Source: Octopus bimaculoides (Eukaryota). From it: DNA of 51,965 nucleotides. This document shows, piece by piece, positions 45,601-47,553 of this stretch. The notes under the pieces were generated by a model that had not been told where the DNA came from, did no database searches, and saw only the letters and a list, made by a program, of their open reading frames with translations. Numbering within the stretch: the stretch's first letter is position 1; the number at the start of each line of letters is the position of its first letter. The stretch is from positions 11,736,599 through 11,788,563 of the forward strand of contig NC_068986.1 of assembly GCF_001194135.2 (NCBI RefSeq), read 5' to 3'. Made by a program: the position numbers and the translations under genes.

Positions 45601-46867
45601 AGACCAGTTTGGCAATATGTATGTATGTATTTGTGTGTGTGTGTATATACATATGTGTGTGTGTGTGTGTGTATGTGAAAAATGAAAACAATAAGTTGAA
45701 GTCCAGTGTTTGAATAAAAGTAGCAGAGATAAAATTGAAACTCTTTATTACCAAATAGCATTTTCCACCATTAGTTTCTGTAATTTTGAGCTTGTTCCAA
45801 ATTCATGTTGGTAATATTATGACTGAAGGAAACCAGCAATGTTTACTACATAGCTAGAACTTGGTGCCAGGTACAAATAAATCAAAGGGGGTTGGCAGTT
45901 AATGGTTTGCAGGTTATATTCTAAGTAAGGGTTATGGCACTCCGGACATTTCAGGACCTCACAGAAGAAATATCAAGAACATAGGGGTTGCCGAGAGCAT
46001 TTAGATGGTTCTGGCAGAAAAAAGGGGATTGGTGGGGTCAGAATGCTGTTTGAGCATGGTTCTCGGCTTCATCAACCCAGGCTAGGTCGCCTGGATGAGG
46101 GGGTTTGTTGTAAGCCCTAAAATCCTGTGACCCCAGGATACAACACTGATTTATCTAAGTATTGCATCTGTAAATGTATGTTGATTTTGGATTTTCTCTC
46201 GTATGTAACAAAATGATGAAAGACAACTTGTTTACATTAGAATTAAAAACCTTCAATAGGAACTAGTTTCCAGTTTTATTGAAGGTGTCCTTTTGATGTT
46301 CATTTTACAAACTAGGCCTAATTTTGAAAGTCAAATTTTTACGAGAGAGCTTAATATCAACATGAAACACAGGAGTCCATTGACAGTAGCAGTTATAATG
46401 TTGCTAAACATGACATTGCAAAGAATGTACTCACTAATGAGTCACCTTTTAAAAGAAGGTATCTAACATTGTGGACCACAGGAGACTTTTTTCAATATAT
46501 CCCTTGACACTGGGTGTGGCTGGTTACATATAGAATTGTTGCTAAAATATCCAAGACATTGCTTCTGGAATTTTTTTTTATCAAAAGCTATAGCTGATGT
46601 TTCATACCTGTTTTATTTTAATCTACTCAGATTAAAATAAAAACACTACTCCTGATTGACTTAGCTCTACAGCAGAATGAAGATTTAGTTCCAATGTAAC
46701 CTAATGATGTAGTTGTATACTGTCAACTTAATGTGACAGTCCCCTGAATGGAATAATATTACTGTTGGTTACACCTCGGAAGCTGCACCACTTCCTGTCG
46801 GCCTTGACACATTTCCTGTGTCCTTATGTTTACAAGGGGGAGACAGGCACCTCCACCTAGCTAAGCC

Positions 46868-46920
46868 TGCATCCAGAGGCATATTTCTGAGTCTTTGCTT
46901 GTCATCAGTCTGGAGTAGCA
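46868..46920 (-). ncRNA. Type I hammerhead ribozyme motif (decayed copy)
   Basis: TGC-TAC-TCCAGA-CTGATGA-CAAG-CAAAGA-CTCA-GAAAT-AT-GCC-TCTGGA-T-GCA; cleavage triplet mutated to GCC. Confidence 0.65.
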
Positions 46921-47267
46921 TGACCTGCTAGTCGAAGATGCCTGTCAAGCCCTTGTAAGCATATAATAATTCTAGTGAAATACATTCACTGATTTCAAAT
47001 TTAGAAATAATATATTTCTAAATCTCTGAGAGATTTATGCAGTAGTGATACGATGATGTAGTTGTATACTGTCAACTTAATGTGACAGTCCCCTGAAGGG
47101 AATGATACTACTGTTGTTTAGACCTAAGAAGCCGCACCGCTTCTTGTCAGCCTTGACACATTTCCTGTGTCCTTATGTTCACTGATTTCTAAATTTGAAA
47201 TCAGTGAATGTATTTCATTAGAATTAAGTTTACAATGGCTTGACAGGCATCTTCGACTAGTAAGTCA

Positions 47268-47320
47268 TGCTAGTCCAGACTGATGATGACCAAAGACTCA
47301 GAAACGTGTCTCTGGATGCA
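47268..47320 (+). ncRNA. Type I hammerhead ribozyme motif (near-intact)
   Basis: Stem I TCCAGA(47274-79)/TCTGGA(47311-16), core CTGATGA(47280-86), stem II TGA/TCA with CAAAGA in the loop, GAAAC-GT-GTC cleavage triplet; distal TGC/GCA pairing across a TAG bulge. Confidence 0.8.
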
Positions 47321-47553
47321 GGCTTAACTGAGTGGAGGTACTTGTCTCTCCCTTGTAAACATAAGGACACAGGAAATGTGTCAAGGCTGACAGGAAACGG
47401 TGCAGCTTCCTCGGTCTAACCAACGGTAGTATTATTCCATTCAGGGGACTGTCACATTAAGTTGACAATATACAACTACTTCATCATATCACTACTGCAT
47501 AAATCTCTCTGAGAGATTTAGAAATGTATTATTTCTAACCAAATGATGTTTTA

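What the first reader, a model, noticed from the sequence alone, without database searches (positions are those of the whole stretch)
46697..47549. Hammerhead-bearing 349-nt retrozyme-like element in a tandem + inverted array with a TSD
Seen: the unit (period 46704 to 47053 = 349 nt) occurs as A-B-C-A then inverted B'-A'-C'. It is flanked by a 13/14 direct repeat (TAACC[T/A]AATGATGT). Each B holds a type I hammerhead; the + copy (47274-47316) keeps CTGATGA, GAAAC, a GUC triplet and a 6-bp stem I. B also folds into a long rod around the ribozyme (tatgtttacaaggg/cccttgtaagcata; gacaggca/tgcctgtc), and A and C carry further hairpins. No ORF. Established: metazoan non-LTR retrozymes are tandem repeats of a few hundred nt with type I hammerheads that yield circRNAs, and Penelope-like elements make tandem/inverted insertions. 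The loop II CAAAGA plus TAC/TAG stem I bulge resembles the Schistosoma Sm-alpha tertiary motif (loop CAAAUA). Inference: the left arm is 476 nt, longer than one unit, so reverse transcription ran across a circular or multimeric RNA. This may be an undescribed cephalopod retrozyme family mobilised in trans. The two copies suggest a CpG-rich ancestor (GAAACGCGTC; CGAG/CTCG stem II).
Basis: partly seen in the sequence, partly recalled or inferred. Interest (0 to 1): 0.88.

Follow-up and report, generated by a model that had tools for sequence, protein, structure and literature searches.

The report
Decayed hammerhead retroelement, Penelope-style insertion
This is an old, dead copy of a small non-coding mobile element that carries a hammerhead-ribozyme motif; it entered a mollusc (probably cephalopod) genome as two head-to-head copies in the way Penelope-like retrotransposons do, so it is a new example of a known kind rather than a new kind.

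Summary
The repeat anatomy is real. A 349-nt unit occurs 1.37 times in the left arm (46704-47182) and once, inverted, in the right arm (47185-47538). The array is flanked by a 13/14 direct repeat (P about 0.001-0.003).

The arms lie head-to-head: hammerhead-sense 5' ends meet at a central palindrome and 3' ends face outward. The three copies of segment A are equidistant, which fits one insertion followed by decay.

A distant relative 2.4 kb upstream (44270-44668, nhmmer E 1e-7 to 1e-9) has the same layout. It has its own 11/12 target duplication and the same two outer termini, one about 55 nt longer. This is the published signature of Penelope-like elements.

The hammerhead is supported only at descriptor level:
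- The + copy has CUGAUGA, GAAA, GUC, a 6-bp helix I and a helix III like the Schistosoma one.
- Such a motif is expected 0.01 times per window.
- Helix II is only 3 bp and lacks G10.1-C11.1.
- The other copy is broken.
- Rfam reports no hammerhead at all.

No arm carries two ribozymes, so this locus cannot itself yield a circle. No genome-wide consensus could be obtained.

Verdict: a likely daughter insertion of a retrozyme-like family, and a new member of a known kind.

The parts
46697..46710 (.). Left copy of the flanking direct repeat (TSD), TAACCTAATGATGT. The last 7 nt coincide with the element terminus.
46704..47182 (-). Left arm, 479 nt = 1.37 units (A1 46704-46833, B 46834-46963, C 46964-47052, A2 47053-47182). 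The hammerhead-sense strand is the minus strand, so the 3' end faces outward at 46704.
46872..46914 (-). Hammerhead copy 1, degenerate. The core CUGAUGA/GAAA and the 6-bp helix I are kept. Helix II is CAAG/CUCA with only 2 pairs, and C replaces U16.1.
   Evidence: (not reported by the descriptor)
46825..46963 (-). Long imperfect hairpin (rod) that extends hammerhead helix I.
   Evidence: I5; z -7.05
47178..47208 (.). Central junction of the two arms. It is a 15+15-nt palindrome built on a natural near-palindrome of segment C. The 5' ends of both arms meet here.
   Evidence: (I9, D10)
47185..47538 (+). Right arm, 354 nt, about one permuted unit: C' part 47185-47226, B' 47225-47354, A' 47355-47484, C' end 47485-47538. 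The hammerhead-sense strand is the plus strand, so the 3' end faces outward.
47274..47316 (+). Hammerhead copy 2, type I topology. Helix I TCCAGA/TCTGGA; CTGATGA; helix II TGA/TCA (3 bp) with loop CCAAAGAC; GAAA; helix III A-U and C-G around GT; predicted cleavage after C47310.
   Evidence: no Rfam hit
47485..47538 (+). About 54-nt 'tail', present at the outer end of the right arm only. It ends at the 3' base of the hairpin TTAGAAAT..ATTTCTAA.
47536..47549 (.). Right copy of the flanking direct repeat (TSD), TAACCAAATGATGT.
44259..44679 (.). Older relative of the same family (about 65% identity), also head-to-head. Left arm 44270-44400 (sense on minus, carries the tail); right arm about 44501-44668 (sense on plus). 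Flanked by GATGAATGTTAT / GATGAATATTAT (11/12).

Best explanation
This is a decayed daughter insertion of a small (349-nt unit), non-coding, hammerhead-bearing retroelement. It belongs to the non-LTR retrozyme / Penelope-derived kind.

Inferred mechanism:
1. An endonuclease made a 14-bp staggered cut in AT-rich DNA.
2. Both free 3' ends primed reverse transcription of element RNA: the top strand for the left arm and the bottom strand for the right arm.
3. Synthesis started at one of two fixed internal sites about 55 nt apart, which left a 'tail' on one arm only.
4. Synthesis ran across unit boundaries, because the template was a circle, an uncleaved multimer, or monomers joined by template jumps.
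5. The two cDNAs met and were joined at a palindromic stretch of segment C.

Shown: the layout, the TSD, the permuted unit longer than one period, the star-like divergence of the copies, and a second related insertion with the same termini.

Inferred: the enzyme (a Penelope-like RT-endonuclease acting in trans), the form of the RNA template, and that the hammerhead motif was once catalytic.

The locus itself is dead. The copies lie about 4-5% from their common ancestor, one ribozyme copy is broken, and no arm has two ribozymes in tandem.
For: Layout.

TSD: 13/14, reached by 6 of 5000 shuffles.

Single event: the three A copies are 91-92% identical pairwise, with 5, 7 and 5 private changes. The 1/14 TSD mismatch fits the same age.

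Both arms contain the same C-to-A unit junction, so the unit really is 349 nt and is not a fragment of a 3-kb element.

The older relative at 44270-44668 (nhmmer E 7e-8 to 1e-9) is also head-to-head. It has an abutting 11/12 repeat; in a control, two random 14-nt stretches shared a 9/10 match in 23 of 20000 trials. One arm ends at ...TTTCTAA and the other about 55 nt upstream at ...TACTCCA/...TACATCA, the same two termini as the main element.

Hammerhead: the descriptor hit is expected 0.01 times per window. It sits at the tip of a rod with z -7.05. Helix I is 6 bp, and helix III ACGUGU is one transition from the palindrome ACGCGU found in the Schistosoma sequence GAAACGCGUC. Loop II is CAAAGA against CAAAUA.

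Literature:
- Canonical metazoan type I hammerheads have a 6-bp helix I, a 4-bp helix II and a 1-2-bp helix III with a palindromic loop, and work as dimers (PMC4209133).
- Retrozymes are tandem repeats of about 150-450 bp with GC <45%, self-paired, with TSDs longer than 4 bp (PMC7229834). GC here is 39-41%.
- PLE insertions are partial tandems with an adjacent inverted 5'-truncated copy and a tail at one end (PMC8557442).
- A PLE protein nicks and extends both strands and starts at two adjacent internal sites (PMC11167929).
- Penelope elements are abundant in coleoid genomes.
Against: - No Rfam hammerhead model reports the motif, even at E<=10 on 111 nt.
- Helix II is 3 bp in one copy and 2 bp in the other. 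The strongly conserved G10.1-C11.1 pair is absent from both and from any simple ancestor.
- The isolated motif folds no better than shuffles.
- Only two copies of the ribozyme region exist, so neither ancestry nor covariation can be tested. The older relative is not confidently alignable across the ribozyme core.
- The tail is about 55 nt, against the published 30-40 nt.
- No PLE ORF is visible in the window.
- No further family copies were obtained from the collections searched. One marginal nhmmer match in an Argonauta hians locus (E 0.022) was not accepted.
Confidence: 0.62

Rival explanations
1. It is a non-autonomous element mobilised by Penelope-like (or similar) machinery, but the hammerhead motif is fortuitous or long vestigial. 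On this view the element is a SINE-like parasite and not a ribozyme-processed retrozyme.
For: Rfam gives no hammerhead hit. Helix II is weak and G10.1-C11.1 is absent. The motif folds no better than shuffles. In a PLE, catalytic hammerhead mutants did not affect insertion in vitro (PMC11167929).
Against: A descriptor hit is expected only 0.01 times per window. It lies exactly at the tip of the rod. The window holds only about three partial tandems with a 150-500-nt period, and two of them carry the only two descriptor hits. Helix III and loop II are near-identical to the Schistosoma ribozyme.
Confidence: 0.17
2. It is a LINE-type twin-priming product. A non-PLE, LINE-like reverse transcriptase copied a short RNA from both nicked strands.
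For: Head-to-head inverted copies with a TSD also arise by twin priming of LINE-1-type elements (from general knowledge). A T34 run lies 7 nt beyond the right TSD.
Against: Neither arm ends in poly(A) or a simple-repeat tail. The two arms duplicate the same sequence rather than splitting one RNA. Two fixed internal start sites recur in two independent insertions, a feature reported as unique to PLEs.
Confidence: 0.08
3. It was produced by DNA-level rearrangement, such as replication slippage or fold-back producing a tandem plus inverted duplication of local sequence, with no transposition.
For: The central junction is a palindrome. The tandem repeat is partial.
Against: A significant flanking direct repeat abuts the array. 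A diverged relative with the same ends and its own flanking repeat lies 2.4 kb away. The three copies are equidistant.
Confidence: 0.06
4. It is a foldback or MITE-type DNA transposon with long terminal inverted repeats.
For: It has long inverted arms and a flanking direct repeat.
Against: The outermost ends are not inverted copies of each other. The left end starts in A and the right end lies about 54 nt further, in C. One arm is 1.37 units of a tandem. The TSDs are 14 and 12 bp in the two insertions, so the length is not fixed.
Confidence: 0.04

Closest known systems
Metazoan non-LTR retrozymes (Cervera and de la Pena 2020, PMC7229834; mussel, coral, axolotl)
   Same: The unit is a few hundred nt (349). 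GC is low (39-41%). There is no ORF. The predicted RNA is highly self-paired and rod-like. A type I hammerhead motif sits at the tip of a long helix I. The unit repeats head to tail. The TSD is longer than 4 bp.
   Different: There are only 1.37 and 1.0 units, in opposite orientations, so no arm has two ribozymes. Helix II is defective and lacks G10.1-C11.1. Rfam gives no hit. Expression, circularity and copy number are unknown. No paper in the library describes retrozymes or hammerheads in cephalopods.
Penelope-like elements and their insertion architecture (PMC8557442, PMC11167929, PMC4209133)
   Same: A partial tandem sits next to an adjacent inverted 5'-truncated copy. An extra tail is present at one end only. 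There are two fixed start sites. The target is AT-rich. A hammerhead motif lies in the repeated part, and dual motifs occur 100-700 bp apart on opposite strands.
   Different: There is no RT/GIY-YIG ORF. The unit is 349 nt rather than about 3 kb. The tail is about 55 nt rather than 30-40 nt. The hammerhead has the canonical helix sizes (6-bp helix I, short helix II) and not the minimal PLE variant with a long helix II.
Schistosoma mansoni Sm-alpha hammerhead (AF036740, as printed in PMC5666329)
   Same: GAAACGUGUC against GAAACGCGUC. Loop II is CAAAGA against CAAAUA. Both have a 6-bp helix I, followed on the 5' strand by a 3-nt internal loop (the loop comparison is from memory of the crystal-structure construct, not tested).
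   Different: Helix II is UGAC/CUCA here against GUCC/GGAC. There is no sequence similarity outside the ribozyme. The tertiary contacts are untested.

Membership tests
Hammerhead ribozyme, canonical metazoan type I | Conserved core CUGANGA ... GAAA ... U16.1-H17 | tested here: met
   Met in the + copy at 47280-47310. In the minus copy the core boxes are kept but U16.1 is C.
Hammerhead ribozyme, canonical metazoan type I | Helix I of about 6 bp, open-ended (type I topology) | tested here: met
   TCCAGA/TCTGGA is present in both copies and is extended by a rod of about 45 bp.
Hammerhead ribozyme, canonical metazoan type I | Helix II of about 4 bp with the conserved G10.1-C11.1 pair | tested here: not met
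   Helix II has 3 pairs (U-A, G-C, A-U) in the + copy and 2 pairs in the minus copy. No copy has G10.1-C11.1. A mosaic ancestor UGAG/CUCA would give 4 bp but still no G-C at the base.
Hammerhead ribozyme, canonical metazoan type I | Short helix III (1-2 bp) with a small palindromic loop, allowing a dimeric form | tested here: met
   ACGUGU is one transition from the palindrome ACGCGU. Predicted duplex energy is -3.9 kcal/mol as it stands and -8.9 for the CG form. The feature is defined in PMC4209133.
Hammerhead ribozyme, canonical metazoan type I | Match to the Rfam hammerhead covariance models | tested here: not met
   No hammerhead family is reported at the gathering score or at E<=10 on 1.2 kb or on 111 nt.
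Hammerhead ribozyme, canonical metazoan type I | Loop-loop tertiary contacts and self-cleavage | not testable with these tools
   Only a resemblance of loop II (CAAAGA against CAAAUA) is available. There is no biochemical test.
Non-LTR retrozyme | Head-to-tail repeats of 150-450 bp, each with a type I hammerhead | tested here: inconclusive
   The 349-nt period is real, but the locus has 1.37 units in one arm and one in the other, with one ribozyme per arm.
Non-LTR retrozyme | Non-coding, low GC, highly self-paired RNA | tested here: met
   The longest ORF is 50 aa, with no homologues. GC is 0.39-0.41, and 60-63% of bases are paired in the circular fold. z-scores are -7.05 and -3.1.
Non-LTR retrozyme | Multicopy family expressed as linear and circular RNA | not testable with these tools
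   One diverged relative lies in the window. No genome or transcriptome of the species was available, and the collection scans gave nothing related.
Penelope-like element insertion signature | Partial tandem plus an adjacent inverted 5'-truncated copy, head-to-head | tested here: met
   Seen at the main element and again at 44270-44668.
Penelope-like element insertion signature | Tail extension at one end only, reflecting two adjacent reverse-transcription start sites | tested here: met
   In both insertions one arm ends at ...TTTCTAA and the other about 55 nt upstream. The length differs from the published 30-40 bp.
Penelope-like element (autonomous) | ORF with a telomerase-like RT and a GIY-YIG endonuclease | tested here: not met
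   No such ORF is visible in or near the element. My Pfam scans of the flanks failed on stop codons, so this rests on reading the stop-free stretches by eye. Hence non-autonomous at best.

The most novel reading that the evidence does not exclude
The two related insertions would be the first sequence-level footprint showing that retrozyme-type hammerhead RNAs are integrated by Penelope-like machinery. The footprint would be priming on both strands and two fixed internal start sites that leave a one-sided tail. They would also define an undescribed retrozyme family in cephalopods whose ribozyme departs from the G10.1-C11.1 rule.
Probability: 0.35. Interest if true: 0.65.

Novelty: new member of a known kind. 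Interest (0 to 1): 0.45.

Why it matters
Reviews state that metazoan retrozymes show no motif that betrays which autonomous element mobilises them (PMC7761336). The link to Penelope-like elements rests on co-occurrence and, recently, on phylogeny (2026 preprint).

Insertions that carry the structural hallmarks of Penelope integration would be independent, mechanistic support for that link. The hallmarks are an inverted partner, a one-sided tail and recurrent start sites, and they can be tested genome-wide. The finding would also extend retrozyme-like elements to cephalopods.

As a single decayed locus it has no likely function for the host.

Tried and rejected
- Rfam over the whole window at the gathering score, and at E<=10 on 1.2 kb and on 111 nt: no hammerhead. 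The weak C/D-box snoRNA and mir-29 hits come from the UGAUGA box and the central palindrome and are chance level.
- Metagenome scan with the ribozyme pattern: four hits, all unrelated GC-rich DNA that looks coding.
- Viral-contig scan with the most conserved 20-mer: nothing.
- I tried to reach other family copies through spurious ORFs. A profile of the two 50-aa ORFs that cross the ribozyme found no protein at E<=1.
- Exact look-up of the window's PDZ exon ORF: not on record.
- I fetched about 95 kb of related mollusc or cephalopod DNA around the orthologous exon, including Argonauta hians. nhmmer gave only one marginal hit (E 0.022) with no inverted partner, which I rejected.
- Pfam scans of six-frame translations of the flanks failed because of stop codons. 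Stop-free stretches show no RT or GIY-YIG by eye.
- ARAGORN found no tRNA-like part, so a tRNA-SINE is rejected.
- Folding of the isolated ribozyme segments was uninformative, z about 0.
- A DNA-transposon TIR reading is rejected because the outer ends are asymmetric.

Full report
**Observation**

- A 349-nt unit, segments A 46704-46833, B 46834-46963 and C 46964-47052, is followed by a second A at 47053-47182, 91% identical.
- From 47185 the same unit runs in reverse complement: part of C (47185-47226), B (47225-47354), A (47355-47484) and the end of C (47485-47538).
- The left arm is therefore 479 nt (1.37 units) and the right arm 354 nt (one permuted unit).
- No other close copy is in the window.
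- The array is flanked by TAACCTAATGATGT (46697-46710) and TAACCAAATGATGT (47536-47549). A 13/14 match between the two 46-nt end regions was reached in 6 of 5000 shuffles and in 3 of 1168 genomic control pairs.
- The last seven bases of the left copy are also the first seven of the unit, so part of the repeat may be priming microhomology.

**Orientation and history**

The hammerhead-sense strand is the minus strand in the left arm and the plus strand in the right arm. The arms are therefore head-to-head. Their 5' ends meet at a 15+15-nt palindrome (47178-47208) built on a natural near-palindrome of segment C, and their 3' ends face the flanking repeats.

The three A copies are equidistant, 91-92% pairwise, with 5, 7 and 5 private changes. 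Substitutions between the arms are 21 transitions to 8 transversions. This star pattern, together with the one mismatch in the 14-mer, fits a single insertion of identical copies followed by about 4-5% decay per copy.

Both arms contain the same C-to-A junction. The template was therefore continuous across the unit boundary, and the unit really is 349 nt rather than a fragment of a longer element.

**A second, older insertion of the same family**

nhmmer with either arm finds 44270-44668 (E 7e-8 and 1e-7; reciprocal 3e-8 and 2e-7; 1e-9 and 2e-9 on the sub-region), at about 65% identity.
- It is again head-to-head. The left arm is 44270-44400 (sense on minus) and the right arm is about 44501-44668 (sense on plus). 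The cores 44325-44400 and 44592-44667 are 89% complementary.
- It is flanked by GATGAATGTTAT and GATGAATATTAT (11/12). In a control, two random 14-nt stretches shared a 9/10 match in 23 of 20000 trials.
- Its two outer termini are the same two as in the main element. One arm ends at ...TTTCTAA, the 3' base of a conserved hairpin. The other ends about 55 nt upstream, at ...TTACTCCA against ...CTACATCA.

Two independent events therefore used the same pair of start sites and each left a one-sided tail.

**The hammerhead**

On the plus strand, 47274-47316 reads TCCAGA CTGATGA TGAC CAAAGA CTCA GAAAC GT GTC / TCTGGA.

In favour:
- My descriptor (helix I >=5 bp, CUGANGA, helix II >=3 bp, GAAA, helix III >=2 bp closed by A-U, H17) finds it. 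It also finds one further motif (see below). The expectation is 0.01 hits per shuffled window on both strands.
- The helix sizes agree with the published canonical metazoan type I architecture: helix I 6 bp, helix II 4 bp, helix III 1-2 bp with a 2-4-nt palindromic loop, active as a dimer (PMC4209133).
- GAAACGUGUC differs by one transition from the Schistosoma GAAACGCGUC. Loop II is CAAAGA against CAAAUA (sequence printed in PMC5666329).
- The motif sits at the tip of a rod of about 45 bp. The left unit folds at -117.4 kcal/mol (z -7.05) and the right arm at -95.5 kcal/mol (z -3.1).

Against:
- Helix II has only three pairs and starts with U-A instead of the strongly conserved G10.1-C11.1.
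- The minus-strand copy (46872-46914) has two mismatches at the base of helix II and C at 16.1.
- The isolated motifs fold no better than shuffles.
- No Rfam hammerhead model reports either copy, at the gathering score or at E<=10 on as little as 111 nt.
- With two copies the ancestor cannot be polarised.
- The older relative cannot be aligned confidently over the core. A collinear CTGATAA..GAAA..CCTGGA..ACTGAG at about 44473-44512 may be a remnant with helix II deleted. This is tentative.

**Mechanism**

The layout is what the literature gives for Penelope-like elements.
- PLE insertions are partial tandems with an adjacent inverted 5'-truncated copy and a 30-40-bp tail at one end (PMC8557442).
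- A purified PLE protein nicks and extends both target strands. It starts reverse transcription at two adjacent internal sites, and the interval between them is the tail (PMC11167929).

Applied here:
1. The top strand was nicked after ...ATGATGT and primed the left arm.
2. The bottom strand was nicked 14 bp to the left and primed the right arm.
3. Both cDNAs grew inward and were joined at a self-complementary stretch.

The enzyme, the form of the template (circle, uncleaved multimer or template jumps) and the joining step are inferences.

The element has no ORF of note and is not tRNA-like. Its GC is 39-41%. These features match non-LTR retrozymes (PMC7229834), which a 2026 preprint derives from PLE pseudo-LTRs. 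No arm holds two ribozymes in tandem, so this locus could not release a unit-length RNA. It is a dead daughter copy.

**Host**

The window is eukaryotic: 35% GC, assembly gaps, and many microsatellites and SINE-like repeats. A PDZ exon at 19670-20119 is most similar to a protein of Argonauta hians (81%), followed by unnamed sequences and by gastropod proteins at 70-75%. The host is therefore a mollusc and probably a cephalopod. The species was not identified. Penelope elements are abundant in coleoid genomes. I found no paper on hammerheads or retrozymes in cephalopods.

**Limits**

I could not obtain more family copies. The metagenome and viral scans, the route through translated ORFs and about 95 kb of related mollusc DNA gave nothing usable. 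The decisive test remains open: a genome-wide consensus, followed by a covariance-model score and a cleavage assay.

**Verdict**

The retroelement reading with Penelope-style integration is well supported and is strengthened by the second insertion. The ribozyme is probable but rests on a descriptor match to decayed copies and fails two membership criteria. This is a new member of a known kind, of moderate interest, chiefly because the insertion footprints bear on how retrozymes are mobilised.

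Noticed in passing
window 47782-48225 (motif 48043-48085, + strand): A second, unrelated partial tandem: a 337-nt unit, 1.3 copies, 91% identical. 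It carries a hammerhead-like motif, TGTGA CTGATGA GGAG ATTG CTCC GAAA TTTTAACA TC / TCATG, with a canonical G10.1-C11.1 helix II. Rfam gives Hammerhead_3 at 20.3 bits, E 0.07 on 351 nt (gathering score 48.5). No TSD was found and the fold z-score is -1.4. This motif and the main element are the only two descriptor hits in the window (0.01 expected).
   Followed up: partly
window 44259-44679: An older head-to-head insertion of a diverged relative (about 65% identity) of the main element. It has its own 11/12 flanking repeat and the same two outer termini. The centre, 44401-44500, is unassigned and may hold a hammerhead remnant that lacks helix II.
   Followed up: yes
window 47557-47590: A run of 34 T starts 7 nt after the right TSD and is followed by a CT-rich low-complexity stretch up to about 47760. 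It may be the poly(A) tail of a minus-strand retroelement, or a microsatellite target of the kind PLEs prefer.
   Followed up: no
window 31056-31400, 34910-35230, 36008-36390, 36696-37055, 38232-38596, 48803-48999: At least six copies, in both orientations and 68-80% identical, of a dispersed repeat of about 350 nt, probably a SINE. They cluster between 31 and 39 kb, with one copy just downstream of the finding.
   Followed up: no
window 19670-20119 (+): An exon-like ORF encodes a PDZ domain of an NHERF-type protein. The best match is Argonauta hians at 81%. It is the only clear host coding sequence seen.
   Followed up: partly
window 15613-16470 (+) and 7040-7775 (+): A gag-like ORF with a CCHC zinc knuckle, interrupted by an assembly gap, and integrase-like stop-free stretches. 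They look like remnants of LTR-type retroelements. No Penelope RT was seen.
   Followed up: no
window 51668-51965 and 33078-33201: Minisatellites: a 42-nt unit repeated 7 times that runs off the end of the window, and a perfect 26-nt unit repeated 4.8 times next to an assembly gap.
   Followed up: no
window 45351-45598: A 46/66-nt tandem repeat (92% matches) about 1.1 kb upstream of the element, adjacent to a (TG)n/(TATG)n tract.
   Followed up: no
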